From IMG/VR virus record IMGVR_UViG_3300032675_000001, positions 296,684 to 360,683 of that record: DNA of 64,000 nucleotides; one strand, given 5' to 3'. Positions 3,572 to 56,556 of the stretch are shown piece after piece. Under the pieces are notes generated by a model. It was given only the letters and a program-made list of their open reading frames with translations, made no database searches and was not told the origin of the DNA. Within the stretch, counting starts at the first letter, position 1. Each line of letters begins with the position of its first letter. The position numbers and the translations under genes are program-made.

Positions 3572-4513
3572 TTATTCGGAGCCGTAACAATTATTTACTC
3601 CGGGTTCTCCGCCAATCAAGTCACCCAATGTCTGATTCCACTTTATGATACTGTCAGTATCATGAAACCTAGACCTCAACTCTTTTCTAACTTTTCTAAA
3701 ATCAAACCAGTCTTCTCTGCCAGTAATAGTAGTTTCCCAGCCAAAACTTTTGTGACGAAGTTCAAGGTTTCCGAATCCCATGTTTTCTAACATTCTTTTT
3801 TTGAGATATCGTATTTTTAAATTATCCCCATCAATATTATCTGGGTCCTCTTCATGAACTTTTATATGCTCTTTAATGAAGAAGATGTTGGATTCAAGGC
3901 TATGGCTTAGCATATTGCCTATGCCAGAAATGCCATTTTCTTGCATGAAAATGTCATAGAAGCAATATTCATGCCGAAGGGGGCTGTAAACTTTCCTACC
4001 TATATTAAGCTGTGGCCAAGTATAATCTCCGCCAATAACTGGACATGAAACACATTGTCCCAACAACCACATATGGGCAGCAACATGCGGCATGGTCAAT
4101 TTATAGGGTTCCATGTATTTTATGTGATCGCCGTTTCCAAAGAAGCTTTCTACATCTAAATCTATCAAAACATGCTTGATTTGGTTTTCTCTGCAAAACT
4201 TTTCTGCATAGTATAGATCATGCGTATTAAAGGGACTTTGTTTATATATAAGCCTCAGTGTCATTGCAACTACTGGGATTTTATTTTGTAAACATGATAT
4301 CAGTGAACATTCACTATCCAATCCTCCGCTGTATAAGATTTCTGCTGGAACATTTTTTCCATAAAAATGTTCAGCCATTGCGGATTGAACGGAATCAAAA
4401 TTTGAAATTTCGGTATCTGAAATTTCAGTAGTAAAGATGTTACGTTCAGGGCCGAACTCCATCGTATGTTTACGGTAGTTGTTCAGCCCTGAATGCCAAG
4501 TTTTTGCAGTCAT
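3572..4513 (-). CDS. PP-loop (asparagine synthase/adenine nucleotide alpha-hydrolase-like) protein
   Basis: YSGGLDSEC PP-loop motif; TAAATA 4 nt before ATG 4513. Confidence 0.6.
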   Translation of the reverse strand: MTAKTWHSGLNNYRKHTMEFGPERNIFTTEISDTEISNFDSVQSAMAEHFYGKNVPAEILYSGGLDSECSLISCLQNKIPVVAMTLRLIYKQSPFNTHDLYYAEKFCRENQIKHVLIDLDVESFFGNGDHIKYMEPYKLTMPHVAAHMWLLGQCVSCPVIGGDYTWPQLNIGRKVYSPLRHEYCFYDIFMQENGISGIGNMLSHSLESNIFFIKEHIKVHEEDPDNIDGDNLKIRYLKKRMLENMGFGNLELRHKSFGWETTITGREDWFDFRKVRKELRSRFHDTDSIIKWNQTLGDLIGGEPGVNNCYGSE

Positions 4514-4520
4514 CAAGTAT

Positions 4521-4820
4521 TTAACTGTTTTTGACGAGGTTCTTTACAATATCGTATTCTTCTGCTGCCTTTTTGAGAGCAGGATATTCTTCTTCAAGAG
4601 TTTTGCGATCAGTTTTCTTGTGTACTCGCTGGATTTCGCCATCTACAACTTCAAGCGAATAATCATAACCATTGAGACGATTAAGACAACGTTGGTAGCT
4701 GTTGGCTTGCGCTTTGTACATAGCAGCAAGAATTGGACTCTTTTCCTTTTCCTCGACTTTAGCCATTTCTCGCAGAAGTTCGATTTCTGCCTTCATTGCA
4801 TCTTCAATAGTGTAAGGCAT
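4521..4820 (-). CDS. hypothetical protein
   Basis: ORF with SD GAGGT. Confidence 0.7.
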   Translation of the reverse strand: MPYTIEDAMKAEIELLREMAKVEEKEKSPILAAMYKAQANSYQRCLNRLNGYDYSLEVVDGEIQRVHKKTDRKTLEEEYPALKKAAEEYDIVKNLVKNS

Positions 4821-4822
4821 GA

Positions 4823-5197
4823 TTACCTCATCTTCTTCAAACGACTAAACACGCCTTCACTGACTTCAAATTTGTCTTCGGTGTGGACACGAATATAATG
4901 TTCTTTCCATTGGGGATCAATACCTGAGCCGTCAACACGATAGTAGTTTGCTGGGCTGCAATTCATTTGTTTAGCCAACACCATCAACCAGTCATCACGA
5001 TCAACACGACCGACAATGCGATATTTGTTGCTGATGCAGATATACCCCTTTTCATGAAGCTGTGTAGCTTCACCCTTCTCTAGAAACTCTACAAGTTCAG
5101 GTGCAGGGTGCATCGCTGGACAATCTTTATCGCCATACTTGCAGGAGCCTTCGTAGTCACCCATGTTACAGTGAGCCATATGAACAGCGTAGGTCAT
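4823..5197 (-). CDS. hypothetical protein
   Basis: HC..G...CKYGD.DCP Cys/His motif at N-terminus; TAATG coupling. Confidence 0.7.
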   Translation of the reverse strand: MTYAVHMAHCNMGDYEGSCKYGDKDCPAMHPAPELVEFLEKGEATQLHEKGYICISNKYRIVGRVDRDDWLMVLAKQMNCSPANYYRVDGSGIDPQWKEHYIRVHTEDKFEVSEGVFSRLKKMR

Positions 5198-5601
5198 TAT
5201 TGTCCTCTCAACTTAGAGTTCAAGTAGTTTTTATACCAATCCTGCGTAGTTTGATACAGCAGTTGACGGCAATCATCATCCATTGTGTTTCTGTCGCCGG
5301 GACTCGCATCTTTTCCCAACTGAACATTAAGTCCATAGTCACCGTTTCCGACCCAAATGCTTACATCATCGCCGTGATTCATGTGGTAGTTATCAGTGCT
5401 CCAAGAAGTCGGATCAGTACGAATAGAGTAGACCACAGCACTTACAGCAGGATCATTGCACTTATCAATGTGAGTAGGAGCATCCTTTGCAATAGGATGA
5501 TGTGCGAATGGATTGGGAACGTATGCACAGCATAGAGCAACCACGAGCATTCCGCCTGCAAGGGAAAAAAATACTTTTTGGCGAGAAAAAATATTATCCA
5601 T
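5197..5601 (-). CDS. exported/membrane-anchored hypothetical protein
   Basis: N-terminal hydrophobic segment; TAATG coupling. Confidence 0.7.
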   Translation of the reverse strand: MDNIFSRQKVFFSLAGGMLVVALCCAYVPNPFAHHPIAKDAPTHIDKCNDPAVSAVVYSIRTDPTSWSTDNYHMNHGDDVSIWVGNGDYGLNVQLGKDASPGDRNTMDDDCRQLLYQTTQDWYKNYLNSKLRGQ

Positions 5602-5807
5602 TATTTGCGACTTTCCAGAATAGTATCACGCACCCATTCACGATCAATACTATCATAAATGGGAAGTTCACCAGAAGCAGAATATTTCCGATCCAGCTTG
5701 CGAGTAGCATCAACTACTTCGGTATAGGTAGCATCTACATCCCTATAGATGCCAGTCTTACCGTTGTAAAATTCAAGAACATAGTTGATAAAATCTTCGC
5801 GGTCCAT
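5601..5807 (-). CDS. hypothetical protein (68 aa)
   Basis: start reassigned to MDREDF (5807), directly after upstream stop. Confidence 0.7.
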   Translation of the reverse strand: MDREDFINYVLEFYNGKTGIYRDVDATYTEVVDATRKLDRKYSASGELPIYDSIDREWVRDTILESRK

Positions 5808-5808
5808 A

Positions 5809-5958
5809 TTACCAATCCTTCTTGGGGTGCTTATCCTTGCGCTTATAGCGCAGTTTGGATTCAACCGTTTTCGGCTTGAAGGGAGTGCCATGGGCATAAA
5901 GCTCCAGCGCACGAATCTTCGGGCGACATGCTTCAACCTTAATAACTTCTTTCTTCAT
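5809..5958 (-). CDS. small basic ArfA-like protein (49 aa)
   Basis: SD AGGAG; PFKPKTVESKLRYKRKDKH resembles the ArfA core F+.+VE..K..Y.RK.KH. Confidence 0.5.
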   Translation of the reverse strand: MKKEVIKVEACRPKIRALELYAHGTPFKPKTVESKLRYKRKDKHPKKDW

Positions 5959-5982
5959 GGCACTTCTCCTTTCTGTGCATTG

Positions 5983-6011
5983 CTTATACATGTGTTGATA
6001 TAGACTGTCAA
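5983..6011 (-). promoter_or_regulatory. sigma70-type early promoter
   Basis: TTGACA-N17-TATAAG. Confidence 0.75.
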
Positions 6012-6012
6012 C

Positions 6013-7309: not shown

Positions 7310-7595
7310 CAGGGTAAACTGTGCGCCCCGAGTTCATAAAGACCACCGTGAACTTGTCAGTTTTGAACTGTGCGTTCAGTTTGCGGCATAAGTTACGAGC
7401 ATGACCCGGATTAGAAAAACTGGTTTTCTTGTATTTGGGTGCAGCATCATTGGTTAGATAGTGTGATGACTTCAGATTGATAGGTTGATCATCATAGAAA
7501 ACTGCCCAAATACCTGCAGCTTCTACGATTTGATCACACTTATATGTTTTTTTGTCTACATATTCTAATAGTACGTTTGGTTGGGTTCTACTCAT
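7296..7595 (-). CDS. hypothetical protein
   Basis: ORF, ATGA coupling; KYKKTSFSNPGHA motif. Confidence 0.75.
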   Translation of the reverse strand: MSRTQPNVLLEYVDKKTYKCDQIVEAAGIWAVFYDDQPINLKSSHYLTNDAAPKYKKTSFSNPGHARNLCRKLNAQFKTDKFTVVFMNSGRTVYPDDLS

Positions 7596-7801
7596 TTAAA
7601 AGAGCCGCCTTTAATCTCTATTTGTATTACATCATTTGATTTATCATTCGTCTTGGCGCTACTCAACTCATACAAATCTGATAGTAACTTTGAAATCTCA
7701 TCACGTAATCCACGTGCTTCTGTGACAGGCAAAACAATGTCTTTTGATTGTTTTGACTCCATCAAAGTCATTTTATCAATGAATCGCTTAATATGAATCA
7801 T
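7592..7801 (-). CDS. hypothetical protein
   Basis: ORF; TAAATA 4 nt upstream of ATG. Confidence 0.7.
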   Translation of the reverse strand: MIHIKRFIDKMTLMESKQSKDIVLPVTEARGLRDEISKLLSDLYELSSAKTNDKSNDVIQIEIKGGSFK

Positions 7802-8256
7802 CAGGTATTTATCGCATTCTGTGCTTCGGTTTCAGTTTTATAGGGACCGGAATATTCATATCGTTGAATGAAGATATACTTAGGACAGAAAACTGCCTGT
7901 TTCACTCCATTCTGGTCCATAGCAAACCATCCAGCCGCATGAAGACATTTGCTTTTCTTTGTAGTTGTGAACAGATGAAGTCCACGCTTAACATCAAAGA
8001 TGGAGTTATAAATCTTTGCAGGAGTTGGGTATTGTGGATATGGCATTGCCACTTTAGTGTTATTAGACTTAAGTGGCTCAAAACGAATGTGAGTCTTTTT
8101 CTTCAACTCATTTGCATTATCAAACTGGAGGAAATTGCCGTTAAGCTGCACACCATAACCGGAATTGTTGGCTTCAATGTTGCCAACCTTCTTCTCGCCA
8201 TCAGTGACAATCCAGAATTGATTCTTGATGATTGGTTTTGCAATAAGTTCGGTCAT
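7801..8256 (-). CDS. hypothetical protein
   Basis: ORF, TAATG coupling. Confidence 0.75.
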   Translation of the reverse strand: MTELIAKPIIKNQFWIVTDGEKKVGNIEANNSGYGVQLNGNFLQFDNANELKKKTHIRFEPLKSNNTKVAMPYPQYPTPAKIYNSIFDVKRGLHLFTTTKKSKCLHAAGWFAMDQNGVKQAVFCPKYIFIQRYEYSGPYKTETEAQNAINT

Positions 8257-22074: not shown

Positions 22075-22761
22075 TCAATCCATTTGATTAATTAGATTTT
22101 CAAGATCATTTAAAAGATTAATAGGTAAGGTTTCGGTGTATCCATCTGAACACTCATTCTTGGTAACTGCGCCATTGACATATCCAAAATGAGATTTGAT
22201 CTTAGATTCCCACTCAAGTCCCTTTTCTCCAGTATCAAAATCTTTTATATAATGTACAGTATATGCCCCATTCTTGGTCCGGTGACTGGCTAGTCTCCTT
22301 TTTAGATTAGTTGTCACCCCAAATTTAATAAAAGTATCAAATAGCAATACATAACCAGTTGATGGTTTAGTTGGATTAAATCCCTGTCCATTGCAGTTTG
22401 GGCATGGTGATTTTCTTTTTATACGATTTGGAACCACTGACCATGTATATCCACATGTAAGGTGGGTATGTGATATTTTTGAGTGTGTGCCATTATATTC
22501 TTCATTGACGATAAAATCTGGATTATTTAAACTCAACTGTTCTACATATTCATCATGTGTTAATTTTTGATTTCTAGCACACTTTGGACAGCCTCTTCCT
22601 ATTTTAATTTTTTCTGGTTTGGCCATCCACGTATGTCCACATCTGAGACTGGTGTATGATATTTTTGTAGTATTATTGATGTAGTTTTCGTTAACTATCA
22701 ATTCAGGTCTGTGTATACGTAAAAATTCTACGTATTCTTCATGTGTCATTTTTTTTCTCAT
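22075..22761 (-). CDS. putative homing endonuclease: 2 zinc-ribbon repeats + GIY-YIG-like domain
   Basis: CG.TW...C..C repeats; GY.L..IKFGVT....R...H...E; GYTET. Confidence 0.7.
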   Translation of the reverse strand: MRKKMTHEEYVEFLRIHRPELIVNENYINNTTKISYTSLRCGHTWMAKPEKIKIGRGCPKCARNQKLTHDEYVEQLSLNNPDFIVNEEYNGTHSKISHTHLTCGYTWSVVPNRIKRKSPCPNCNGQGFNPTKPSTGYVLLFDTFIKFGVTTNLKRRLASHRTKNGAYTVHYIKDFDTGEKGLEWESKIKSHFGYVNGAVTKNECSDGYTETLPINLLNDLENLINQMD

Positions 22762-22804
22762 ACCAATATGATATCAGATATCACGAAAAAGTAAACAGTT
22801 TTGG

Positions 22805-23293
22805 TCAACATAGTTGTTCAAGTTCTTCAAGTAGGAAAAGGGGTAGTGTCTCGGTATATCCACAGGGGCACATCTCTTTGGAAACTGCACCTTGGGGATA
22901 TCCAAAATGATTTTTTATTCGTTTTTCCCACTCAATAGCATCTTTTCCGTTAGTGAATGTTTTTGTATAATGCACCGTGTGTTTTCCGTTCTTTGCTCGG
23001 TGATCTTTTAGTCTGTTCTTTAATATGTTAGTAATACCATATTTTAAGAATCCATCAAAAATCAGAATATAAACGGTTACTGGCTTAGTGGGATCAAACT
23101 TGCATATACGACACATGGGACAGCCTCTCCCAGATTTAATATTGGTTGGTCGCGCCAGCCATTCATGTCCACAAGTAAGGTGGGTGTGTGATATTTTTGT
23201 TGCGGCATTGATATATCTACCGTTAACTACAAACTCTGGTCTATGTGTGCGGAGATATGCTTCGTATTCTTCCTGAGTTACCGTTTTTGTCAT
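22805..23293 (-). CDS. putative homing endonuclease, paralogue of 22075-22761
   Basis: one H..C..C..C ribbon + KYGIT..R..H..E..GYTET; similar promoter. Confidence 0.7.
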   Translation of the reverse strand: MTKTVTQEEYEAYLRTHRPEFVVNGRYINAATKISHTHLTCGHEWLARPTNIKSGRGCPMCRICKFDPTKPVTVYILIFDGFLKYGITNILKNRLKDHRAKNGKHTVHYTKTFTNGKDAIEWEKRIKNHFGYPQGAVSKEMCPCGYTETLPLFLLEELEQLC

Positions 23294-23340
23294 ACCATAA
23301 TGGTATCACATATCACAAAAAAGTAAACACTTTCGGGCAA

Positions 23341-23928
23341 TCACTGGAAAATGTGATGATTCTTTTCGCCGTAAATCTTGATGTATTTACCAGCTAACAT
23401 ATCAGCCATAGCCTCAATAGGACTACCGGGATAGCTGGCACCGGGCTTGATCATACCGATTTCATCTTGACGAACATGGACCAGTTCATGAAAAACTGTG
23501 CGTAGTATGTCAACAAGATTTCTGTCCTTGGCATAAACCCATACTGAACCTTGTCCCTGAACATGCCCACCAGTGTGATGATTGTCTTGGGCATCTTGTG
23601 TATCATAGCTAAGTTGAATTTTTGGTAGATGTTGAATGTGAAGTCTTCTGCCAGCCCATTCAGCAAACTTTCTGACTTCTTCTCCAAGATCATCAGTTGG
23701 GTTTCCGCTAGTTTCGTCTAAATCTCTAACGTCTTCAATCCAATCGGCGGGAACTTTATGGTAAGTTCTTTTAAAAATATCATGAAGTGCTTCATCGGTA
23801 AGTCTATGCTTTTTTGCAATGCTGCGAATCAATCTATCAATGGTATCATAATCATGCTTCTCCAAAGAAGGTAGTTTCTTGGCTAGTTCATGTGCAGCCG
23901 CTGCATGGATGATGTCTTCTGTTAACAT
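23341..23928 (-). CDS. HExxH zinc-metallopeptidase-like late protein
   Basis: RTVFHELVH.RQ...SPIE..A; TAAATA-N5-ATG. Confidence 0.65.
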   Translation of the reverse strand: MLTEDIIHAAAAHELAKKLPSLEKHDYDTIDRLIRSIAKKHRLTDEALHDIFKRTYHKVPADWIEDVRDLDETSGNPTDDLGEEVRKFAEWAGRRLHIQHLPKIQLSYDTQDAQDNHHTGGHVQGQGSVWVYAKDRNLVDILRTVFHELVHVRQDEIGMIKPGASYPGSPIEAMADMLAGKYIKIYGEKNHHIFQ

Positions 23929-23946
23929 GAATGTATTTATCCTACT

Positions 23947-23981
23947 AAAAACAATAACGGCGGAGAAATTAATCCCCGCCG
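23947..23981 (-). terminator. intrinsic terminator after OMP gene
   Basis: CGGCGGGGA/TCTCCGCCG stem followed by TTATTGTTTTT. Confidence 0.75.
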
Positions 23982-24004
23982 CCATCATTTGACTGTGAAC
24001 GCTA

Positions 24005-24481
24005 TTAGAAGCGAACAGAAGTCGTAGCAACTACGCCGTTGTTCTTGACACCGCCAAGATCAGTATGAGCATACTGAACACCAACTGAGAATGGTCCTAC
24101 AACATTCAAATCAACGCCCCCAGTTGCACGAAGCCCCTGAAGATTGTGTGCATGAAGATCGCGTAGGTTATCATAACCAAGACCAGCATATACAAGAGTA
24201 TAACCAGTCACTTCATAACCAAGACGAGCGCCAACATTGACATCGCGACGATCAAACACGTTGTCAAGGCCAGTTTCCAAACCAGCAGTGATCGGACCAA
24301 CAACCTTGGTGTCGTAACCGAGTTCAACACCATAAGTGAAGTCACGATTTGACGGAATGTTTGAGATGTCCTGATAACCAACTTCACCAGTTACGCGAGG
24401 ACCAACAAAGCTATCTGCCATTGCTGGAGCGGCAGTTGCGGCGGATACAGCCAATAGTGCTGCTGTGATTAACTTCTTCAT
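24005..24481 (-). CDS. 8-stranded outer-membrane beta-barrel protein
   Basis: signal peptide A-x-A, alternating beta strands, C-terminal VRF (BAM signal). Confidence 0.85.
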   Translation of the reverse strand: MKKLITAALLAVSAATAAPAMADSFVGPRVTGEVGYQDISNIPSNRDFTYGVELGYDTKVVGPITAGLETGLDNVFDRRDVNVGARLGYEVTGYTLVYAGLGYDNLRDLHAHNLQGLRATGGVDLNVVGPFSVGVQYAHTDLGGVKNNGVVATTSVRF

Positions 24482-32133: not shown

Positions 32134-33582
32134 TTATTTTTGAAAAAGTGAAAATAAATTCCCAGTGACATAGTTCTTATCTTGTCCAAACATACTATGT
32201 TGTAAATGCTTGATAATATCTGGGGTAAGGTGTCTTGCTCTCATTCCCCCACGAGGAAAAAGATGCACTTCTACTGGTTCATCGCCTTCAACCTTTTGAA
32301 TAGCCATCATGCGATTGCGCCCTTCATGACCACTGACTCTGGCATCTTTACTGAAGTCACCGTCTTCCCATTCTCGTGGAATATCTATGGTCAAAAAGGG
32401 TGAACCCAATGCTCCACCTTGTTCAATATGACCTGCAATGTGATCAACGCTTGTGGGATTGTTTAATCTGTGAGCAAGCTTTAAAAACATACTCGGTTTC
32501 ATCAAAACACGCAATCCCATGTAATCCACGTTAGCATTATATGGAACAGAACCAAGCCCGTTTTCGTTGTCTACTTTGTATTCATCAAGTTCTGATTCTT
32601 TTATGTCTTTTGGCATTGCATAAAAGATATGCTTACCTACAGCGGCAAGTTTTTTAGTTCCTTTTGCCCAATATGGATGAATATCTTTGGTGTGATAAAA
32701 GACTGCACCGTGTGTTGGGTCAGGAGCATGACCAGACATGATCTTCTTGGCAAGCTCATAGCTCTTGGCCCATAGCTTGTAATCAAGACCTTTGCCAGTG
32801 TTTTCAAGCTTCTTTAACCATGTATTGAAATCTTGACCACCGGGTGCTTTTCTGGACTTGATGATCTTATCAAGATGTTCCATTTCTTGTGCATATTTGT
32901 AGTTTGGATCGTTGTGGTTCCAGCAACTAAACTGACTTGGTTTTGTGGCAACACCAACAATACCTTGACCAAAACGTCTTGCGTGTGCCTTATCATTGGC
33001 GCGATTCTTAATGACATTACCGATTGCTAGCATACCATTTGCGCCTTGATCCCTTGCTTCTCCCCACATTGTGTGGGCAAGAATCTTAGTGGGGTCTTGG
33101 TGTACTGGTTGTGTTGCTGCTGGGAGATCAAAACGAACAACAGGATCAAACTGCTGCTGTTTATTGTGCATAGCCAATCCGCCTGCCGCCAAAGCCGCTG
33201 CGCCGCCTGCGGCTAGTGCACCCTTCTTAGCCCAATCGGGAAAAGCTTCATCAAGCGATTCATTCATACCTAAAGGAAGATTGGCAACATGCTGCAATGG
33301 AAGATTGACTAGTTTCAATGCACCACTCGCAAACTGTCTCCAGTAACCGGTATTATGAATATGCTGCATCATGTAATACAGATATCTTGCATCAAGAACA
33401 TCAGTAGCCGTTACCTTGATACCGATATTTTCTGGTGAATATTCCTTGGTTGGTGTGCCTACCGATTTGTCACTACCTTTGCGCTGAAGCCAGAAATCAG
33501 CATCAGGAAAGTTTGTCTTCACTGTTGCTAAATCTTTGAGCCTTACGCCAGCGGATTCTGTTATGAACTCTTTCGCTCTCAT
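32134..33582 (-). CDS. multidomain late protein: HsdS/TRD-like + SleB-type cell-wall hydrolase (Hydrolase_2) + ParB-like
   Basis: start MRAKEFITE; LAHTMWGEAR..G..GM.A...VI.NR, QFSCWN, DPT.GA.FYH, G.H.FY; C-term GHEGRNR. Confidence 0.75.
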   Translation of the reverse strand: MRAKEFITESAGVRLKDLATVKTNFPDADFWLQRKGSDKSVGTPTKEYSPENIGIKVTATDVLDARYLYYMMQHIHNTGYWRQFASGALKLVNLPLQHVANLPLGMNESLDEAFPDWAKKGALAAGGAAALAAGGLAMHNKQQQFDPVVRFDLPAATQPVHQDPTKILAHTMWGEARDQGANGMLAIGNVIKNRANDKAHARRFGQGIVGVATKPSQFSCWNHNDPNYKYAQEMEHLDKIIKSRKAPGGQDFNTWLKKLENTGKGLDYKLWAKSYELAKKIMSGHAPDPTHGAVFYHTKDIHPYWAKGTKKLAAVGKHIFYAMPKDIKESELDEYKVDNENGLGSVPYNANVDYMGLRVLMKPSMFLKLAHRLNNPTSVDHIAGHIEQGGALGSPFLTIDIPREWEDGDFSKDARVSGHEGRNRMMAIQKVEGDEPVEVHLFPRGGMRARHLTPDIIKHLQHSMFGQDKNYVTGNLFSLFQK

Positions 33583-35816
33583 TATCCAATCCGCTCTGCT
33601 CGTATATGTCGAGAATTCCAAGTTGGGTTTTCTCGTCTAGCGATATTTATTGCTTCTTCCGCACTTGAAGCAGTCACATTGGATATACCACTGGCGTCTC
33701 CTCTATGGACTCTCCATAACGCTGGTGCTGTTTCTGTATTTTCAGATGATGAAGTATTACCATTTTCTGCTTCTTCCCAGCGAGCATTAAATCGCATGAT
33801 CCAATTAATCTGAGCATCAGTTAGGTTTTCATAGTCTTGATCATGTGGGTCAACGTGAGGAAGACCTTGTTGATCGCACCATAGTTCATATTCACGAGTT
33901 AGTTGATCAATAGCTTGCGCTCTTGGTCCATCCTGTTGAGGAGCATATGCATTGACATCATCTGAAGGAGTAGGAGGTGTTTGGCGGCGACCGGGTTCGG
34001 CAACGTCAACAGAAATATTCTGTAGTGGCATAGTTCTCCACACGTGATTGCGAGCCGCCAGCCTATTATATGCCACTTCTGAATTGGGACCAGATGCGTA
34101 TGCAGGAGCAACTGAACCATCACGTGTCATAAATCTATATGTTGTTTCACCCTCGGCAGGCTCATCAAGAATGCCCTGTGGATCATTTTCACCAGATAGT
34201 ATCTTAGCTAGTTCATCGTTCGTTTTACGATTGTACTTCTTCTTTGCAAGAGCACCGGCAAGTTCTTCCTTATTAAGTTCACCGGCCATATATCTAGCAA
34301 ATAAACTCATTTCTGCCTTAGGGTCTTTTGGTTTAAGTAACTTATATAATCCCTTTAAGTATTCTTTACGATACTTCTGTGGATCACAAGCTGCATCAAG
34401 TGCTACGACAAATCTCAACACAGTATTTTCAATCTTACTAAAGTTAGAGTTTAACCAATCATTACCGGGACCACGAAACTCAACCCAGTTTTCTTTAGTA
34501 TTAATACTGGTGAACTTTCTGGTTGACCCATTATGAATAATCTTACTTGCTATTTCTTCCATATTACTGCGTAATTTTTCAAATAATCTTTCTGTTTCCT
34601 GTGGATTATCTTTTGCTTTATTTTTAATAATATCAAGTGCAGACTCACAGTAAGAGTTAGCTATACGACCAAACTGGTTAAGAACATACTGATCTCCGGA
34701 AAGAATAGCAAGCTTTACATAATCCAAGTTACTTTTACTATAGTTAGGAACACTTACGTTCATGTGTAAACCGCATGAACTATTAGTGTATGCACCAACG
34801 TCATCTGCCCATTCTTTAATCTTGGAGATATCATCAAACATTTCATCTACTGGCAGTGGAGGACTAATAAACTCTAATCCTGCCTCATCTGAACCATATG
34901 CTCTTAAACTAGAATCTGGTTCAATAGTATACCCATCAGATGTTCTGCGAGCACCGTGATATGATGAACTCCAGTTTACGCTGCGCCCGATGGCGTCTTC
35001 AAATCTGCTAGCGACTTCTTCAATGGATTCGCCGCCATTGTTGTTATATACTGGTTCAGGATCACTCCAGCGGGTCCATGCTAAATCATTATTACGGTTC
35101 ATTCGGTGATTATATACGTCATCCATATCATTGATACCGATGCTCTCTAGGAACTCTTCTTGATCAACCTCATCACGATCAAATCCGTATATGTATGGGC
35201 TATTTTCATCTGGGTCGGCTTCATCGTCTTCATCATAACTATAATAGTTTGGAATCATGTCGCCGTCTTTAAATGACTCGTATGCTTGATCGTAATAGTT
35301 GTAGCCAGCAGCATTGCCGGGTCTTTTCCATTCCTCATCGGCTACTTCTTCGTAATCTTCTTTAGTGGGAATACGATCACCCAATAGGTCTTCTGGTTTA
35401 TCTAGATAATCAGCAATATCTGATGGATCAGCATTTTTCTTAATCCAGTTTAAAAGATATTCCTTGCCTCTTTTTTCCCAATCTTTTTTGACATATGTTT
35501 CTAAATATTCATCAAACTTTTCTTCTAATACCCGTCTTAATTCGGCAATAGTGGATCGGGTATTGTGATCACGTTCATCAAAGAAATCAACAATGTCATC
35601 AATGCTTCTAGCAGGCTCATTTTCATCGTAACGTTCTGGGTCTTGGTAGTCTGGTTCATCATCCTCGGTGTTAACGTCAGGAACGATCATTTCAAACTCC
35701 ATACCAACCTTAGCATCAATCTGATTAGCCAGTTTTTTAAGGTTAGTAGGACTCATCTCCACTTCAAGGAGTTGTTGTTGTGCTTCGTATAGGTCAAGGA
35801 AATGTTTTGCTCTCAT
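33582..35816 (-). CDS. amidoligase (COOH-NH2 ligase family) protein
   Basis: VGMEFEM, EPDSSL, LEFISPP, CGLH.NVS, KF.SIN, VEFR. Confidence 0.8.
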   Translation of the reverse strand: MRAKHFLDLYEAQQQLLEVEMSPTNLKKLANQIDAKVGMEFEMIVPDVNTEDDEPDYQDPERYDENEPARSIDDIVDFFDERDHNTRSTIAELRRVLEEKFDEYLETYVKKDWEKRGKEYLLNWIKKNADPSDIADYLDKPEDLLGDRIPTKEDYEEVADEEWKRPGNAAGYNYYDQAYESFKDGDMIPNYYSYDEDDEADPDENSPYIYGFDRDEVDQEEFLESIGINDMDDVYNHRMNRNNDLAWTRWSDPEPVYNNNGGESIEEVASRFEDAIGRSVNWSSSYHGARRTSDGYTIEPDSSLRAYGSDEAGLEFISPPLPVDEMFDDISKIKEWADDVGAYTNSSCGLHMNVSVPNYSKSNLDYVKLAILSGDQYVLNQFGRIANSYCESALDIIKNKAKDNPQETERLFEKLRSNMEEIASKIIHNGSTRKFTSINTKENWVEFRGPGNDWLNSNFSKIENTVLRFVVALDAACDPQKYRKEYLKGLYKLLKPKDPKAEMSLFARYMAGELNKEELAGALAKKKYNRKTNDELAKILSGENDPQGILDEPAEGETTYRFMTRDGSVAPAYASGPNSEVAYNRLAARNHVWRTMPLQNISVDVAEPGRRQTPPTPSDDVNAYAPQQDGPRAQAIDQLTREYELWCDQQGLPHVDPHDQDYENLTDAQINWIMRFNARWEEAENGNTSSSENTETAPALWRVHRGDASGISNVTASSAEEAINIARRENPTWNSRHIRAERIG

Positions 35817-35843
35817 TGAGGTATTTATCAAACTTTAGGATTG

Positions 35844-49397: not shown

Positions 49398-50186
49398 TTA
49401 GGTAGTTTGGTTACGCTTGATACTTTCAATGACATCAATGCTTACATTATCAGGAATGAATGGTTTTAGCAAGAGAATTTGATCACCATATTGCCCATTT
49501 TGCATAGGCATACCGTAACCGGGCAGTCTAATTTGCTGATACGGTTGGGTTTTTTCATGAATTTTCACTTCAATTTTTTTTCCACCAATCGTGTCAACTT
49601 CTACCACAGTTCCGACGATAAGATCGAGAACTGAAATAGAAAGATTTGAGTAAAGATCGTATCCTTTACGATCAAAACGCAAATCTGGCATAACGATAAA
49701 CTCTACCAAGAGAGTTGCATCGTCAATGACACCTTCATAACGTATTTGGCTACCAGAGTCAACACCTTTTGGTACCTTGATGGTGATGAGTTTTGTTCCG
49801 TTAGGCGTATTGGCCTGTAGGAAGTGTTCTGCACCATTGTATGCGTCAATGAGTGAGACTGTCACTCTAGTTCTGTATGTAGGCTTTTGTGGCTGTCTCT
49901 GATGCATGTTTTGACCAAAAACCTGACTGAACAGACTATCAATATCAAAACCATTGACATTAAAGTTGAATCCACCCGGCATTCCGTTAAACTGTGGTTG
50001 CGGGTTATCATATTGTGACTTTTTAGCAGGGTCGCTTAATGTTTCGTATGCCGTGCTAATTTCTTGAAATTTTGCTAGATCACCACCCTTATCAGGATGA
50101 TGCTGCATTGCTAGTTTACGATATGCTTTTTTGATTTCTTCTGGGGAAGCATCTCGCGATACTCCCAGTGTGTTATAATGATCCAT
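49398..50186 (-). CDS. dnaJ: DnaJ-class co-chaperone (type II/CbpA-like)
   Basis: J-domain with HPD, G/F region, C-terminal domain, no zinc finger; start may be 50186 or 50192. Confidence 0.9.
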
Positions 50187-50221
50187 TTTCATATCCTAAC
50201 ACACTGGGAGTTGAATGTCAA
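50161..50221 (-). promoter_or_regulatory. sigma70 promoter overlapping a perfect 15-bp inverted repeat around the dnaJ start
   Basis: TTGACA-N17-TAGGAT; arms 50161-50175 and 50197-50211. Confidence 0.75.
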
Positions 50222-51766: not shown

Positions 51767-52378
51767 TTAACCCTGTGGTGCAGCGGAAGGTGGCATTGCT
51801 GCTTGTTGAGCCATTGGTTGATTTTGGTCTTGCATTGTTTCTGCACCGTGTTCTTGACTGTCCATTTCATCAAGGTCTTCGTTGTATGCATCTTCAATGT
51901 CTGAAAGGTCAATAGTTTGATCAGCAAGATCAATTGATCCTTCTTTGATGTCATTCATGAGTTCAATTGGAATCTTGATTTCAACAAACCAAACTTTGCG
52001 TTTTTTCATTTTTGGATATCTGGTTCCCGGAACAAAATCTTCATAGTCTTGTACTTCTACAGGAACTTCAAGTTCTGACTTTCCAAATGTTACTTTGCAT
52101 CCAATCGCATCCAATCTCAGTGCGCCTCGTGGATCAGGCATCAACTTGTAAGGCCACATGAAAGTACATTTGCAAGAATATCTGCCGACAACTGGACCAT
52201 CTACAAGTTCACCAATGAGCCAATTTTTGTATGCGTACAGGTCTGCTTCGTCCAATACTCGCTCAAAGTCAAGTAAGGTGGACATGGAGCCATCGCTCAT
52301 GTAAACGTTCTTAATCGTATCAACAATGCTTACGAAGTTAACGTCATTAAAGAATTTATCTGCTGGTAAACTAGTCAT
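51767..52378 (-). CDS. conserved-type late hypothetical protein
   Basis: L.DFERVLD..DLY.Y.NW..GELV.GP...MPDP.G..RL; TAAATA-N5-ATG. Confidence 0.75.
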   Translation of the reverse strand: MTSLPADKFFNDVNFVSIVDTIKNVYMSDGSMSTLLDFERVLDEADLYAYKNWLIGELVDGPVVGRYSCKCTFMWPYKLMPDPRGALRLDAIGCKVTFGKSELEVPVEVQDYEDFVPGTRYPKMKKRKVWFVEIKIPIELMNDIKEGSIDLADQTIDLSDIEDAYNEDLDEMDSQEHGAETMQDQNQPMAQQAAMPPSAAPQG

Positions 52379-52559
52379 ACGAGTATTTATCTTTTTAGGA
52401 CTATTGCAAGGAATTCGGTAGAATTCTTGCAGCGTAGATTAGTATTTATCCCGTGAAACTATTTTACTGTTGCTGATAGTTTACACATTCTGAATATCTA
52501 AGTATCTATGAGAGCAAGTTGTGCTTCTCAATAACGGTGTATCAGATTAGGAGAATCAT

Positions 52560-53940: not shown

Positions 53941-54870
53941 TCATATAGTAGTTAATTCGCAAAGTGTTGCTGCCATACTGATTTCGGGAATACCAACGAG
54001 CGGCAGATTTGCTAGCCCATTACGAATAGTAATGATAGCAGCATCCTTTTTCTCGGTAGTGTTGCCCCATAGATCAAGATTGTCATACATCCATCGGTAA
54101 CAGTCTTCAATACGAGTAGGATACAGTGAAATGTATTGCAACAACTGCTGGCGACCTTCAAGAATCTTCCCAGACTTAAAAAGTTCTGTAGCAGCAACAA
54201 GAAGTTCATCTTCTCCACTACCGGTTGACTGCGGTTTGTTCAGTGTTCCACTCGTGGAGTTCTGTTGCAACTGATTAAGACACTTGCGTAGATCAGGATA
54301 TGAACTACGCACATATGTATCAAGATCATCCAAATCAAACTCAATCCCCTCATTGAGCAACACAGTGGCTGCACGAGTGGTGAAGTCAGTCATGTCTGGT
54401 TTAGCAATATGAAACTTGTAGCAGCGGCTTTCACGCAATGCCGCAATGATCTTATGCTCATAGTTGCAAGTAAGAATATAACGCACCGTGTCAGCATATG
54501 CTTCCATATCATTACGAAGTGCCGCCTGTGATGCCTGTGTCAAGTAGTCTGCTTCGTCTAGCAAAACTACCTTGAACTTACCGAATGGCATAGTCTGCAC
54601 GAAGCCATTGATCTTGTCGCGTAGGAAATCAATGCCGTTTTCTCTGGAAGCATTGATTTCAAGAACATCATATTCTTCTACGTCAAGTGCCTTAATAAGG
54701 ACTTTAGCGAGTGTAGTTTTGCCAGTGCCGGGATCACCAGATAGAAGCAGGTGTGGAATAGTTCCTTCTTGAATCCAATGTTCTACTTGCTTCTTCTGAT
54801 TCTCATTAACAAATACATATTCATCAATAGATACAGGTCTATACTTCTCAACCCAAAGTTGATTTTTCAT
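53941..54870 (-). CDS. clamp loader AAA+ subunit (gp44/RFC-like)
   Basis: LWVEKYRP, GDPGTGKTT, INAS, LDEAD, SRC. Confidence 0.93.
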   Translation of the reverse strand: MKNQLWVEKYRPVSIDEYVFVNENQKKQVEHWIQEGTIPHLLLSGDPGTGKTTLAKVLIKALDVEEYDVLEINASRENGIDFLRDKINGFVQTMPFGKFKVVLLDEADYLTQASQAALRNDMEAYADTVRYILTCNYEHKIIAALRESRCYKFHIAKPDMTDFTTRAATVLLNEGIEFDLDDLDTYVRSSYPDLRKCLNQLQQNSTSGTLNKPQSTGSGEDELLVAATELFKSGKILEGRQQLLQYISLYPTRIEDCYRWMYDNLDLWGNTTEKKDAAIITIRNGLANLPLVGIPEISMAATLCELTTI

Positions 54871-54897
54871 ATTTCACTTTCATTTGTTTGAGATTGT

Positions 54898-54926
54898 ATT
54901 CTATATGATTTTGGGGAAAATGTCAA
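54898..54926 (-). promoter_or_regulatory. sigma70-type promoter
   Basis: TTGACA-N17-TAGAAT. Confidence 0.8.
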
Positions 54927-54929
54927 GAG

Positions 54930-54989
54930 TTTTGGGAAGTGGGGGCAGTTGCATAGCACTCCGCCAAAATGTTTATCCACTCCCCAAAA
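54930..54989 (-). other. nested stem-loop downstream of groES
   Basis: 13-bp outer stem and GGCGG/CTGCC inner stem, with G-U pairs valid on minus strand. Confidence 0.5.
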
Positions 54990-54993
54990 ACCT

Positions 54994-55368
54994 TTAATAA
55001 TCTACACCTGTCATAGTGTAGTCTTCAACTTTTTCTTTACTTATTAACAAAATATCATTAGGGTCTACTTTACGGATGACTTTCTCGCCGTCTTCGTCTT
55101 CAATGGTTTGACCACGTGACCAGCGACCGTGTGCTATCATAATATAATCGCCTACTTCTATATCTTCTTTTGATTTAGGTCCTACTGCATATACCTGTGC
55201 CCAACGGGGACGGATACCTGCACTTTTCATATCGTCATCTAGCAAAATGAGTCCACCCCGACTTAGACGTTCTCTGAACTCCATTCCATGAACTAGGATA
55301 TGATCTCCTAATGCACGGAACTCACTTTTTTTAAATACTGATTTAGTTAAGTTACGTTTTTCAGCCAT
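54994..55368 (-). CDS. groES: GroES-like co-chaperonin
   Basis: AL.D.ILV...GGLIL....V.AVGP....VGD.I. Confidence 0.85.
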   Translation of the reverse strand: MAEKRNLTKSVFKKSEFRALGDHILVHGMEFRERLSRGGLILLDDDMKSAGIRPRWAQVYAVGPKSKEDIEVGDYIMIAHGRWSRGQTIEDEDGEKVIRKVDPNDILLISKEKVEDYTMTGVDY

Positions 55369-55370
55369 TG

Positions 55371-55724
55371 TTATTTAGACTTTTTACTCGTAGTTGTGGC
55401 AGTTTGTTGCGCCTTGATTTGCTCAACTTCCGCCGAATCATCGTCATCAAAGCCAAGATCATCTGCAGTGAATTCTTCTTCCATCTGATCGGCAGCAGCA
55501 GGAGTTGCATTTTTTGCAACGTTATTGACTGCACGATTTGAAACAGTCTTCTGATATGCCTGTGATGCTCTTTGAGTTACGGGAACAATAATTTTTCCTT
55601 TTGCGTCAATCTGATCGCCTCTAGCGTTAACGCTCATGTTGCCCACTGCACGAGTGCGCTCATTTCTTGCTGCCAATGCAGCCATATCTAAGCTTTTTCC
55701 TTGTGCTGTTCTATATGATGCCAT
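55371..55724 (-). CDS. late hypothetical protein
   Basis: YRTAQGK.LDM..L...NE..RAVGNM.VNARGD; TAAATA 55745-55750. Confidence 0.75.
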   Translation of the reverse strand: MASYRTAQGKSLDMAALAARNERTRAVGNMSVNARGDQIDAKGKIIVPVTQRASQAYQKTVSNRAVNNVAKNATPAAADQMEEEFTADDLGFDDDDSAEVEQIKAQQTATTTSKKSK

Positions 55725-55765
55725 TGTAAATCTCCTTTACCTTGTATTTATGTTTTTGAAATTTG

Positions 55766-56272
55766 TTACTTCAAAAACTCATGTATGGAGAGGTCATAAT
55801 AGAGTGAGTTTATTTTGTGTATCCCGATTAGATATAGCACAAAACTACTGACACTGGAACCACGACCAACGCCCCATACGATGTTGTGCTTACGCATAGT
55901 GTCAACGAGATATTTAAGATACCTTAGGAGCATGAACATGTCGCGTTCTTGATAGAGCAAAAGTTCTTCCCCTGCTCTTTGTAATTCTGCTTCATCTGCA
56001 CATTGATCTAATACGAATTTTGCGATATCAAAGTCACGATATTCGTCAGGAATAAACCATCTGTTTCTTAGTTCTTCGTCAAACTCTTTAACAGTTTGTG
56101 AGCTTGGTTCATATTGTATTAGATGGGGAATTTTCTGCAAGTCTAGACCGACATCAAACTTAATCTGCTCTGCAACGAGAACATTCTTAAGTTCAATGTC
56201 GGGGTTGGTTAGATATAGATCACATAGGTCTTGCTCTGTGTATATCTGTTGACCAAACTTATCTGTAAGCAT
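55766..56272 (-). CDS. stand-alone fragment homologous to DNA polymerase III alpha (DnaE)
   Basis: R..EEL.....LVD......WGVGRGSSV.S.VLYLIG.H.I..L.Y.L...EFL. Confidence 0.8.
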   Translation of the reverse strand: MLTDKFGQQIYTEQDLCDLYLTNPDIELKNVLVAEQIKFDVGLDLQKIPHLIQYEPSSQTVKEFDEELRNRWFIPDEYRDFDIAKFVLDQCADEAELQRAGEELLLYQERDMFMLLRYLKYLVDTMRKHNIVWGVGRGSSVSSFVLYLIGIHKINSLYYDLSIHEFLK

Positions 56273-56274
56273 TC

Positions 56275-56556
56275 TTATACTATAACACGCTCTTCGTGAA
56301 TTGTCAAGCCATAAGCTTTTGCAATATGCATATGGTATTCAACTGCCTCTTCCCAATTGCGGTGACGAGCGATAACTTCGCTGTCTTCTTTGGTAAACAG
56401 ACAGCTTTCAAAATTATAATCTACAGGATGGTACAGCGTCCCATCAAGACACGACAGTTCCACAGTAGATAACCATTTCTGACTATCACGAAGGATATCA
56501 AACAGATCATCATTTTTACTGACGATTTGCCGCCTCTGTTGGATTTGGTAGGTCAT
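56275..56556 (-). CDS. hypothetical protein
   Basis: STV.L...FES..F......R...WEEA...H. Confidence 0.7.
   Translation of the reverse strand: MTYQIQQRRQIVSKNDDLFDILRDSQKWLSTVELSCLDGTLYHPVDYNFESCLFTKEDSEVIARHRNWEEAVEYHMHIAKAYGLTIHEERVIV

What the first reader, a model, noticed from the sequence alone, without database searches (positions are those of the whole stretch)
4513..56307. Pervasive leaderless-mRNA architecture from both early and late promoters
Seen: TAAATA-N5-ATG at 23928, 35816 and 52378; TAAATA-N4-ATG at 4513 and 7801. Sigma70 -10 boxes lie exactly 6 nt before the ATG at 22761, 23293, 50186 and 56272. Where an SD-like sequence exists at these starts it would lie upstream of the predicted +1. 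Known: T4 late and sigma70 transcripts start ~6-7 nt after these boxes, and leaderless mRNAs are common in Alphaproteobacteria. Inference: at least nine genes start transcription at or next to the A of AUG. This could keep them translated when SD-dependent initiation is compromised, and it means several ORF-track starts are too long.
Basis: partly seen in the sequence, partly recalled or inferred. Interest (0 to 1): 0.65.

Follow-up and report, generated by a model that had tools for sequence, protein, structure and literature searches.

The report
Promoters abutting start codons: leaderless phage genes
In this uncultured 361-kb lake-water jumbo phage and its relatives, dozens of genes have a host-type or T4-type late promoter placed so that transcription should begin at the A of the ATG, a conserved layout that strongly implies leaderless mRNAs but has not been confirmed by RNA mapping.

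Summary
All nine sites exist as described, on the minus strand.

The pattern is far above chance:
- Genome-wide, TAAATA is followed by an ORF-opening ATG after exactly 5 nt 21 times and after 4 nt 7 times, against about 3 at other spacings.
- Strong TTGACA-N17-TAnnnT promoters end exactly 6 nt before an ATG 7 times, against about 0.5.
- GTG and TTG show no peak. T4 and ten cultured relatives show none either.

These genes lack Shine-Dalgarno sequences (5/25 versus 247/365), although SD is the norm in this phage. Their first 40 nt are less structured.

The layout is conserved while surrounding sequence has diverged:
- 53 of 54 distinct upstream contexts of the gene at 52378 keep TAAATA-N4/5-ATG.
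- 49 of 50 contexts of the gene at 56272 keep the -10 box 5-7 nt before ATG.

A gp55-type late sigma factor is encoded. An alpha-type tmRNA points to an alphaproteobacterial host.

No RNA data exist, so transcription starts are inferred. About 40 of 390 genes (11%) fit the pattern. Site 4513 is weak, 7801 may instead be translationally coupled, and 22761 and 23293 are paralogs.

Leaderless mRNAs are known. Leaderless use of T4-type late promoters across a whole clade appears undescribed.

The parts
56279..56307 (-). Sigma70-type promoter TTGACA (56302-56307), 17-nt spacer, TG-extended -10 TATAGT (56279-56284). Six nt then separate it from ATG 56272.
   Evidence: In 50 distinct ortholog contexts the best promoter ends 6 nt before ATG in 43, 5 nt in 5 and 7 nt in 1.
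55766..56272 (-). Predicted leaderless early gene, 168 aa, DNA-polymerase-related (phrog_11127). No SD.
   Evidence: Orthologs align from residue 1.
50193..50221 (-). Sigma70-type promoter TTGACA-N17-TAGGAT with TG, 6 nt before ATG 50186. The AGGA inside the -10 box is not a conserved SD.
   Evidence: Nearly all close homologs (53-61% identity) have TTGACA-N17-TAnnnT 5-6 nt before ATG without AGGA.
49398..50186 (-). Predicted leaderless early gene, 262 aa, with an HPD (J-domain-like) motif. The mechanical ORF start at 50192 is 2 codons too long.
52384..52391 (-). T4-type late box GATAAATA, 5 nt before ATG 52378, in a 181-nt divergent intergenic region.
   Evidence: 53 of 54 distinct ortholog contexts keep an in-frame TAAATA-N4 (19) or N5 (34)-ATG.
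51767..52378 (-). Predicted leaderless late gene, 203 aa, virion structural protein (phrog_12928, E 4e-33).
35822..35829 (-). Late box GATAAATA, 5 nt before ATG 35816.
   Evidence: The only relative found has GATAAATA 22 nt upstream with a TAAGGA SD and a GTG start.
33582..35816 (-). Predicted leaderless late gene, 744 aa. The mechanical TTG start at 35831 is 5 codons too long.
23934..23941 (-). Late box GATAAATA, 5 nt before ATG 23928.
   Evidence: 18 of 48 distinct family contexts have TAAATA 4-7 nt before the ATG.
23949..23990 (-). Terminator-like 18-bp hairpin (-26.2 kcal/mol, z -5.4) with a U-rich 3' side. It ends 20 nt before ATG 23928 and so leaves room only for the late box.
23341..23928 (-). 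Predicted leaderless late gene, 195 aa. The mechanical TTG start at 24030 is 34 codons too long and would run through the hairpin.
22768..22795 (-). Weaker sigma70-like promoter TTTACT-N16-(TG)TATCAT, 6 nt before ATG 22761. It contains GTGATAT/TGATATC repeats.
22075..22761 (-). HNH homing endonuclease gene, 228 aa, no SD.
   Evidence: (phrog_681, E 8e-42).
23300..23327 (-). Paralogous copy of the promoter at 22768-22795: TTTACT-N16-(TG)TACCAT, 6 nt before ATG 23293.
22805..23293 (-). Second HNH homing endonuclease gene, 162 aa, tandem paralog.
7806..7813 (-). Late box GATAAATA, 4 nt before ATG 7801. The ATG overlaps the TGA stop of the upstream ORF (TGATG).
7592..7801 (-). 69-aa ORF with no family hit. 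It is either leaderless or translationally coupled.
4518..4524 (-). Weakest site: TTAAATA, 4 nt before ATG 4513. The TAA of the box is the stop codon of ORF 4521-4820.
   Evidence: One relative at 57% identity keeps TTAAATA-N4-ATG, and one at 46% has an AGAGGA SD instead.
3572..4513 (-). 313-aa gene of unknown function. The mechanical TTG start at 4516 is 1 codon too long.

Best explanation
The window belongs to a complete 360,683-bp jumbo phage of the T4 superfamily, from lake-water metagenomes, probably infecting an alphaproteobacterium.

About 40 of its roughly 390 genes are built as leaderless transcription units.
- For early and DNA-metabolism genes, a host sigma70 promoter (TTGACA, 17 bp, often TG-extended TAnnnT) sits so that its -10 hexamer ends 6 nt before the ATG.
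- For late genes (virion proteins and others), the phage's T4-type late box (G/C/A)ATAAATA(C), read by a phage gp55-like sigma factor, ends 5 nt (sometimes 4) before the ATG.

In both cases the canonical start site is the A of the ATG. The mRNA would then begin with AUG, carry no Shine-Dalgarno sequence, and be bound through its 5'-terminal AUG by ribosomes and initiator tRNA.

Shown here: the sequence geometry, its statistics, the SD depletion, the ATG exclusivity, the low 5' structure, the late sigma gene, and the conservation.

Inferred: the actual 5' ends and the mode of translation.

A likely consequence, also inferred: these genes are translated only from mRNAs made at their own promoter. 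Read-through transcripts would carry the same AUG internally without an SD.
For: Spacing peaks:
- TAAATA to ATG: 21 sites at N5 and 7 at N4, against a background of 2.9.
- Sigma70 promoters (at least 10/12): 7 at N6, against 0.48.
- The peaks are specific to ATG.
- A blind positional scan finds TTGAC at -35 and TAAAT at -11 relative to ATG.

SD and mRNA features:
- SD is the norm in this phage (GGAG/AGGA peak at -12 to -10).
- Only 5 of 25 box-N4/5 genes have any SD, against 247 of 365 others (Fisher 3e-6). Where an SD-like word is present it lies upstream of the box.
- The first 40 nt of predicted leaderless mRNAs are less structured (-2.2 versus -3.9 kcal/mol, P 4e-4).
- The base before the ATG is a pyrimidine in 84% of 84 distinct N5 contexts.

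Context leaves no room for another promoter:
- Strong hairpins followed by a T-run sit directly upstream of the box at window 23928 and at genome 27881 and 248687.
- A tRNA-His gene ends 30 nt before genome 231533.
- Four sites lie in divergent intergenic regions.

The boxes are the same element as leadered late promoters. The flanking preferences are shared (A at the position before TAAATA, C after it), and the leadered class carries SDs.

Machinery and gene functions:
- A late sigma gene is present (phrog_12791, E 3e-74).
- N6 genes encode dNMP kinase, exonuclease, primase, a phosphohydrolase and a polymerase-related protein.
- N5 genes include virion structural and baseplate proteins.

Conservation in IMG/VR relatives at 60-88% protein identity, with otherwise diverged upstream DNA: 53/54 contexts, 49/50 contexts, and nine further gene families nearby.

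Controls: T4 has no ATAAATA closer than 12 nt to an ORF-opening ATG, with its peak at 25-29 nt. Ten cultured T4-superfamily phages show no excess.

Literature:
- Box position -13 to -6 (PMC1524935).
- Pribnow box 6-8 nt from starts as the leaderless signature (PMC6028130).
- AUG identity, zero leader and accessible 5' end as the determinants of leaderless translation in Caulobacter (PMC8459731).
- 375 leaderless mRNAs in Caulobacter and 171 in S. meliloti (PMC4117421).
Against: - No 5' end has been measured. No RNA run holds this phage.
- The start-site distance for this phage's late polymerase is taken from T4, and no gp33 or gp45 homolog was detected.
- N4 sites need a start one base nearer the box than the T4 rule. 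N6 late sites would leave a 1-nt leader or need a shift the other way.
- Most box-N4/5 genes (24 of 28) follow a co-directional gene at a short gap. In some (4513, 7801) the upstream stop codon overlaps the box or the ATG, so reinitiation could also explain the missing SD.
- The host is unknown, so its capacity for leaderless translation is assumed.
- My gene calls are home-made (dicodon scoring). 118 genes had no SD by my rule, so absence of SD alone is not specific.
Confidence: 0.75

Rival explanations
1. Translational coupling. The genes are internal cistrons of longer mRNAs and are translated by termination-reinitiation from the upstream gene. That would explain why no SD is needed. The nearby boxes would serve other purposes or be incidental.
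For: 24 of 28 box-N4/5 genes are co-directional with an upstream gene, many at gaps of 4-40 nt. At 7801 the ATG overlaps the upstream TGA. At 4513 the TAA of the box is the upstream stop.
Against: - It does not explain the exact N5/N4 or N6 spacing, the full bipartite -35/-10 promoters, or the shared flanking consensus with leadered late boxes.
- It does not explain conservation of the box-to-ATG distance in 53/54 and 49/50 contexts.
- It cannot apply to sites behind terminator hairpins, behind a tRNA gene, or in divergent intergenic regions.
Confidence: 0.1
2. The A/T-rich boxes act on the RNA as SD-independent translation enhancers (for example S1-binding sites) inside longer leaders. Transcription would start further upstream.
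For: The motifs are A/U-rich and sit where an SD would normally be. Non-SD initiation exists in many bacteria (PMC6028130, PMC4117421).
Against: - The early class keeps a TTGACA hexamer 17 bp upstream of the -10 box, literally at -35 from the ATG. That has no meaning for an RNA element.
- The late box is identical to the one found 17-24 nt upstream of SD-led genes.
- Three sites follow strong hairpins plus a T-run by about 15-20 nt.
Confidence: 0.07
3. Short-leader variant. Transcription starts 1-5 nt upstream of the AUG rather than on it, because this phage's polymerases start closer to the box than the T4 and E. coli rules predict.
For: Both N4 and N5 (and some N6) occur among orthologs of one gene, so the spacing is not absolutely fixed. 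The start distance has not been measured for this phage.
Against: - Sharp modes lie exactly at the canonical distances for two unrelated promoter types.
- There is a pyrimidine at -1 and A at +1 in N5 sites.
- In Caulobacter each added 5' nucleotide roughly halves leaderless translation (PMC8459731), so selection should favour zero leader.
Confidence: 0.06
4. Chance, or an artefact of choosing starts.
For: The number of sigma70-like matches in the window is no higher than in shuffled sequence. TAAATA is a common word in a genome of 41% GC.
Against: - Poisson P is 7e-12 and 8e-7 for the two peaks.
- There are no peaks for GTG or TTG, in T4, or in ten other phages.
- Conservation across more than 50 diverged contexts.
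- Ortholog alignments begin at residue 1 of these ATGs.
Confidence: 0.02

Closest known systems
Leaderless mRNAs of bacteria, recognised computationally by a Pribnow box 6-8 nt from the start codon (GeneMarkS-2 group C; mapped in Caulobacter crescentus, Sinorhizobium meliloti and Mycobacterium). The phage example is lambda cI from PRM (recalled from memory).
   Same: - -10 hexamer 6 nt before the ATG.
- No SD.
- ATG strongly preferred.
- Unstructured 5' coding end.
- Mixture with SD-led genes in the same genome (PMC6028130, PMC4117421, PMC8459731).
   Different: Here it is a lytic jumbo phage using the layout for about 11% of its genes. A second, phage-specific promoter class does the same. 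5' ends are not mapped.
T4-type late promoters (TATAAATA at -13 to -6, read by gp55 with gp33 and the gp45 clamp), and the ATAAATA late motif of Rak2-like jumbo phages CBB and GAP32.
   Same: - Same core box with A or C tolerated at its first position.
- A gp55-like sigma gene is present.
- The boxes precede virion genes.
- As in CBB, no gp33 or gp45 homolog is detectable (PMC1524935, PMC5259590).
   Different: In T4 the box lies 12-30 nt from the ATG with an SD in between. In this phage about a third of late boxes abut the ATG at N4/5. No excess of this spacing is seen in CBB, RaK2, KVP40, S-PM2, Syn9, Atu_ph07, Phosso, XaC1, Serratia BF or Vibrio 2.275.O.
Late-transcript-specific translation of T4 genes e, soc, 49 and I-TevI. 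In these, a hairpin hides the SD or AUG in read-through early transcripts, and the late promoter starts inside the hairpin.
   Same: The possible outcome is the same: protein is made only from the mRNA started at the gene's own (late) promoter. Homing endonuclease genes are among the users in both: four HNH genes here (window 22761 and 23293; genome 177895 and 181257; PMC3014915).
   Different: The means differ. There is no sequestering hairpin here. Instead the SD is absent and a 5'-terminal AUG would be used. This functional parallel is inferred and was not tested.

Membership tests
Leaderless mRNA (bacterial) | Promoter -10 element at the fixed short distance (6-8 nt) from the start codon that puts +1 on the start codon | tested here: met
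   N6 peak for sigma70 promoters. N5/N4 peak for the late box, whose published position is -13 to -6 (PMC1524935, PMC6028130).
Leaderless mRNA (bacterial) | No Shine-Dalgarno sequence downstream of the predicted +1 | tested here: met
   By construction there is no room for one. In addition only 5/25 have any SD-like word within 20 nt, against 247/365 other genes.
Leaderless mRNA (bacterial) | Preference for AUG as the 5'-terminal start codon | tested here: met
   The peaks exist for ATG only, not for GTG or TTG, which make up 18% of SD-led starts.
Leaderless mRNA (bacterial) | Accessible, weakly structured 5' end | tested here: met
   Mean MFE of +1 to +40 is -2.2 versus -3.9 kcal/mol for SD-led genes, P 4e-4.
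Leaderless mRNA (bacterial) | [quoted passage not shown] | not testable with these tools
   Only DNA runs (lake-water metagenomes) hold this sequence.
Leaderless mRNA (bacterial) | Translation from that AUG (ribosome footprints or N-terminal peptide) | not testable with these tools
   Uncultured phage. Indirect support only: ortholog alignments start at residue 1.
T4-type late promoter | TATAAATA-like box | tested here: met
   Consensus (G/C/A)ATAAATA(C), shared by the ATG-abutting and the leadered classes.
T4-type late promoter | Phage-encoded gp55 late sigma factor | tested here: met
   G000:C1:155692-156585. T4 gp55 matches at E 1.5e-6. phrog_12791 'sigma factor for late transcription' matches at E 3e-74.
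T4-type late promoter | gp33 co-activator and gp45 sliding clamp | tested here: inconclusive
   No match to T4 gp33 or gp45 by single-sequence search. The same absence is reported for phage CBB (PMC5259590). Divergent analogs cannot be excluded.
T4-type late promoter | Precedes late (virion) genes | tested here: met
   Virion structural proteins at window 52378 and at genome 16976 and 57571; baseplate wedge at 146946. HNH endonucleases and genes of unknown function are also preceded by the box.
Sigma70 promoter | -35 TTGACA, 16-18 bp spacer, -10 TAnnnT | tested here: met
   Matches of 10-12 out of 12 at 50186 and 56272 and at seven further genome sites. Only 9/12 at 22761 and 8/12 at 23293.
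Sigma70 promoter | Activity as a promoter | not testable with these tools
   Conservation of both hexamers and the spacer across 50 contexts is indirect support.

The most novel reading that the evidence does not exclude
A widespread uncultured clade of freshwater T4-superfamily jumbo phages uses leaderless placement as a promoter-gated translation switch.

A gene that abuts its own sigma70 or gp55-type promoter would be translated only from the mRNA born at that promoter. Read-through transcripts from upstream units would carry the AUG internally without an SD and stay silent.

This would replace the SD-sequestering hairpins that T4 uses for e, soc, 49 and I-TevI. It would be the first case of T4-type late promoters making leaderless mRNAs. 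A phage-encoded initiator-like tRNA may assist.
Probability: 0.35. Interest if true: 0.7.

Novelty: new variant of a known kind. Interest (0 to 1): 0.6.

Why it matters
If the 5' ends are where the geometry predicts, this would matter in four ways.
- It shows that a phage-specific sigma factor of the T4 type can be harnessed to make leaderless mRNAs. The T4 post-transcriptional review does not mention this at all (no occurrence of 'leaderless' in PMC3014915), and no searched paper pairs it with TATAAATA.
- It affects annotation. Gene callers that look for an SD will misplace these starts. Four of the nine mechanical ORF starts in the window are too long.
- It offers a compact way to tie translation to promoter choice in densely packed phage genomes.
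- It gives a sequence-only handle (the box-to-ATG spacing histogram) for recognising this expression mode, and probably the host type, in metagenomic phages. More than 200 related contigs in IMG/VR share the conserved examples.

Tried and rejected
- **RNA evidence.** The one run search returned only DNA metagenomes. Read laying was therefore not used, because contigs of DNA runs cannot show a transcription start.
- **Near-identity search.** It found no close record among deposited phages.
- **Same peak in cultured relatives.** Not found in Phosso, Atu_ph07, Vibrio 2.275.O, XaC1, Serratia BF, CBB, RaK2, KVP40, S-PM2 or Syn9, nor in T4. Those scans used the word alone without an ORF filter, so a small class could be missed.
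- **Accessory factors that might favour leaderless mRNAs.** No gp33, gp45, RegB or ribosomal protein S21 was found. Only a sub-threshold S1-like hit appeared.
- **Terminator scan.** The simple scan did not list the hairpin upstream of 23928. Folding shows it clearly.
- **Counting promoter-like sites.** Uninformative, because matches are no more frequent than in shuffles.
- **Internal and other sites.** TAAATA-N5-ATG at window 28338 lies 217 codons inside an ORF and was discarded. N3 sites (for example window 55368) are at background frequency and were not counted.
- **Literature.** Searches for leaderless together with T4-like late promoters, gp55, TATAAATA, jumbo phages or cyanophages found no prior description. 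phiKZ dRNA-seq found no leaderless transcripts (PMC8244752), and AR9 UTRs are 26-491 nt (PMC5312081).
- **Tools not needed.** The large protein searches, structure prediction and complex prediction were not used.

Full report
**What the window is**

The 64-kb window is the last 64 kb (296,684-360,683) of a single-contig virus record of 360,683 bp. The record has direct terminal repeats, 41.1% GC, and is rated complete.

It occurs in many lake-water and freshwater metagenomes and in no RNA run. No deposited phage is close at the DNA level.

Its DNA polymerase is 45-46% identical to those of Sinorhizobium phage Phosso and Agrobacterium phage Atu_ph07. It is about 42% identical to Rak2-like and other jumbo phages.

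The genome carries 43 tRNA genes and a permuted tmRNA that scores as alpha_tmRNA (65.8 bits, cut-off 50). An alphaproteobacterial host is therefore likely, though not shown.

Nearly all genes of the window lie on the minus strand. All nine sites of the finding are minus-strand starts.

**The observation**

Every motif is present as described. Five ATGs are preceded by TAAATA at 5 nt (23928, 35816, 52378) or 4 nt (4513, 7801). Four of these five have the fuller form GATAAATAC.

Four ATGs (22761, 23293, 50186, 56272) are preceded by a TAnnnT hexamer ending exactly 6 nt upstream, with a -35 hexamer 16-17 bp further up. The sites at 50186 and 56272 have perfect TTGACA, a 17-bp spacer and a TG-extended -10. 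The scan tool finds them independently.

**Is it more than chance?**

| Test | Peak | Background |
|---|---|---|
| TAAATA to ATG opening at least 50 codons | 21 at N5, 7 at N4 | about 3, with a second broad hump at 17-24 nt |
| Sigma70 promoters matching at least 10/12 | 7 at N6 | 0.48 per spacing |

Poisson tails are 7e-12 and 8e-7. GTG, TTG, CTG and ATT show no peak at these spacings.

A blind scan of all 5-mers at all offsets upstream of the first ATG of 387 called genes returns three kinds of fixed-position signal. These are the SD words at -13 to -10, TTGAC/TGACA at -35/-34, and TAAAT at -11.

With the same script, T4 has no ATAAATA closer than 12 nt to an ORF-opening ATG, and its peak lies at 25-29 nt.

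**What goes with the spacing**

- **SD use.** SD-led initiation is the norm in this phage. Yet only 5 of 25 genes with TAAATA-N4/5-ATG have any SD-like word near a candidate start, against 247 of 365 other genes.
- **Other no-SD genes.** The list of genes without SD contains many further cases of a full sigma70 promoter ending 6 nt before the ATG. Examples are at genome 12869, 25800, 34244, 39837, 41905, 226498, 259451 and 289157.
- **5' structure.** The predicted 5' ends are less structured than the same region of SD-led genes.
- **Start-site preference.** In 84 distinct N5 contexts the base before the ATG is a pyrimidine in 84% and G in 1%. This is the usual preference at a start site (pyrimidine at -1, purine at +1; the rule is recalled from memory).
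- **Match to Caulobacter rules.** AUG identity, zero leader and accessibility are the three features that set leaderless translation efficiency in Caulobacter (PMC8459731).

**Are the boxes promoters?**

- The ATG-abutting boxes share flanking preferences with the boxes that sit 17-24 nt upstream of SD-led genes (A before TAAATA, C after it).
- The phage encodes a gp55-type late sigma factor.
- The N5/N4 genes include virion structural and baseplate proteins. The N6 genes encode dNMP kinase, exonuclease, primase, a phosphohydrolase and a polymerase-related protein. This is what late and early classes should look like.
- Context often leaves no room for any other promoter. A strong hairpin ends 20 nt before ATG 23928. 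Hairpins followed by a T-run directly precede the box at genome 27881 and 248687. A tRNA-His gene ends 30 nt before genome 231533. Four sites, including 52378, lie in divergent intergenic regions.
- The published position of the T4 late box is -13 to -6 (PMC1524935). A -10 hexamer spans -12 to -7. So N5 and N6 respectively put +1 on the A of the ATG.
- A Pribnow box 6-8 nt from gene starts is the signature used by GeneMarkS-2 to call leaderless transcription (PMC6028130).

**Conservation**

IMG/VR holds hundreds of related contigs.

- **Virion gene at 52378.** 53 of 54 distinct upstream contexts (60-88% protein identity, upstream DNA otherwise unalignable) keep an in-frame TAAATA-N5 (34) or N4 (19)-ATG.
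- **Gene at 56272.** The best sigma70 promoter ends 6 nt before the ATG in 43 of 50 distinct contexts, 5 nt in 5, and 7 nt in 1.
- **Gene at 50186.** Nearly all close homologs keep the promoter at 5-6 nt but not the AGGA that happens to lie inside its TAGGAT box. That AGGA is therefore not a conserved SD.
- **Gene at 23928.** Its family keeps the box at 4-7 nt in 18 of 48 contexts.
- **Gene at 35816.** Its one relative has the late box 22 nt upstream with a TAAGGA SD and a GTG start. This natural contrast fits the rule that only leadered versions tolerate GTG.
- **Gene at 4513.** It has few relatives. One keeps TTAAATA-N4-ATG and one has an SD instead.
- **Other families.** Near the 52378 orthologs, nine further gene families show the same layout.
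- **Cultured phages.** Ten cultured T4-superfamily phages show no excess of the spacing. The trait seems specific to this uncultured clade.

**Grading the nine sites**

| Grade | Sites | Reason |
|---|---|---|
| Strong | 56272, 50186, 52378, 23928, 35816 | Consensus motifs, plus conservation and/or constraining upstream context |
| Moderate | 22761, 23293 | -35 is only TTTACT with a 16-bp spacer; the two are tandem paralogs, so one event |
| Moderate | 7801 | Consensus box, but the ATG overlaps the upstream TGA; the 69-aa ORF has no known relatives |
| Weak | 4513 | T at the box position where none of 24 other sites has T; the TAA of the box is the upstream stop codon |

Genome-wide I count 28 late-type and about 13-15 sigma70-type cases among roughly 390 genes. 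That is about 11% of genes, and roughly a third of late boxes that face a gene.

**How it most likely works**

Host RNA polymerase with sigma70 (early), or with the phage late sigma (late), would start on the A of the ATG. The mRNA would have no 5' UTR, and ribosomes would bind the 5'-terminal AUG with initiator tRNA.

This is efficient in alphaproteobacteria. Caulobacter has 375 leaderless mRNAs translated as well as leadered ones, and S. meliloti has 171 (PMC4117421).

Because most of these genes follow another gene on the same strand, read-through RNAs would carry the AUG internally without an SD. Protein would then be made only from the gene's own promoter.

T4 reaches the same end for e, soc, 49 and I-TevI with hairpins that hide the SD in early transcripts (PMC3014915). 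It is notable that four HNH endonuclease genes here use the leaderless layout. This gating idea is inference.

I found no RegB or S21 gene.

**Novelty**

Leaderless mRNAs and their promoter-distance signature are known, and phage examples exist. I found no report of T4-type late promoters producing leaderless mRNAs. The CBB paper describes the ATAAATA late motif in Rak2-like phages without such a feature (PMC5259590). phiKZ and AR9 have none (PMC8244752, PMC5312081). I therefore rate it a new variant of a known kind, resting on strong but indirect evidence.

**Limits**

- No RNA data exist for this phage.
- Gene calls are home-made.
- Start distances are borrowed from T4 and E. coli.
- The host is inferred only.
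- No alternative genetic code was used.

Noticed in passing
G000:C1:78913-79297 (minus strand; outside the window), locus L374 364-708: The phage carries a permuted (two-piece) tmRNA with tag ANDNSTMDIALAA. It scores as alpha_tmRNA (RF01849, 65.8 bits, cut-off 50) and as tmRNA_permuted (RF04321, 85.5 bits). This hints at an alphaproteobacterial host.
   Followed up: partly
G000:C1:216380-255641 (outside the window): A cluster of 43 tRNA genes. It includes a CUA-anticodon (amber-suppressor-like) tRNA at 216380-216454 and three CAT-anticodon tRNAs. The one at 254579-254657 has an unpaired C1/A72 at the top of the acceptor stem, which is the hallmark of a bacterial initiator tRNA. That could be relevant to leaderless initiation.
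   Followed up: partly
window 22075-23327 (minus strand): Two tandem paralogous HNH homing-endonuclease genes next to the DNA polymerase gene (18275-21028). Each has a copy of the same promoter region, which holds GTGATAT/TGATATC repeats that look like an operator.
   Followed up: partly
G000:C1:91776-91829 (outside the window): Two divergent genes are separated by a palindrome, ATAAATATCATATGATATTTAT-like, that holds a late box on each strand. These are back-to-back late promoters sharing one symmetric sequence.
   Followed up: no
Loci L216-L265 (distant homologs of window gene 49398-50186): In other IMG/VR phages the homologous J-domain-like gene is preceded, about 20 nt upstream, by a conserved hairpin (GGTATAGTATAAT..ACTATACC plus a T-run). 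The hairpin contains the -10 box of a TTGACA-N17-TATAAT promoter, so promoter and terminator-like stem overlap.
   Followed up: no
Loci L005-L009 (closest relatives of window gene 51767-52378): This is the only ortholog group without the ATG-abutting box. It has a one-base variant (TTAATA) in that place and a second intact GATAAATA 26 nt upstream. It looks like a recent switch from leaderless to leadered.
   Followed up: no
N4 versus N5 sites, this genome and loci L005-L368: N4 sites often have G directly before the ATG (37% of 38 contexts; 5 of 7 in this genome), whereas N5 sites almost never do (1% of 84). Unexplained. It may reflect start-site choice when the spacing is one base short.
   Followed up: partly
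window 55368 (minus strand): CTAAATA-N3-ATG precedes a 124-aa gene without SD. N3 is at background frequency genome-wide, so it was not counted, but it may be a further member of the class.
   Followed up: no
G000:C1:270143-270325 (minus strand; outside the window): A 72-aa ORF with a weak, sub-threshold S1-domain match (14.3 bits, cut-off 22). It lies directly upstream of a predicted leaderless late gene at 270094.
   Followed up: no
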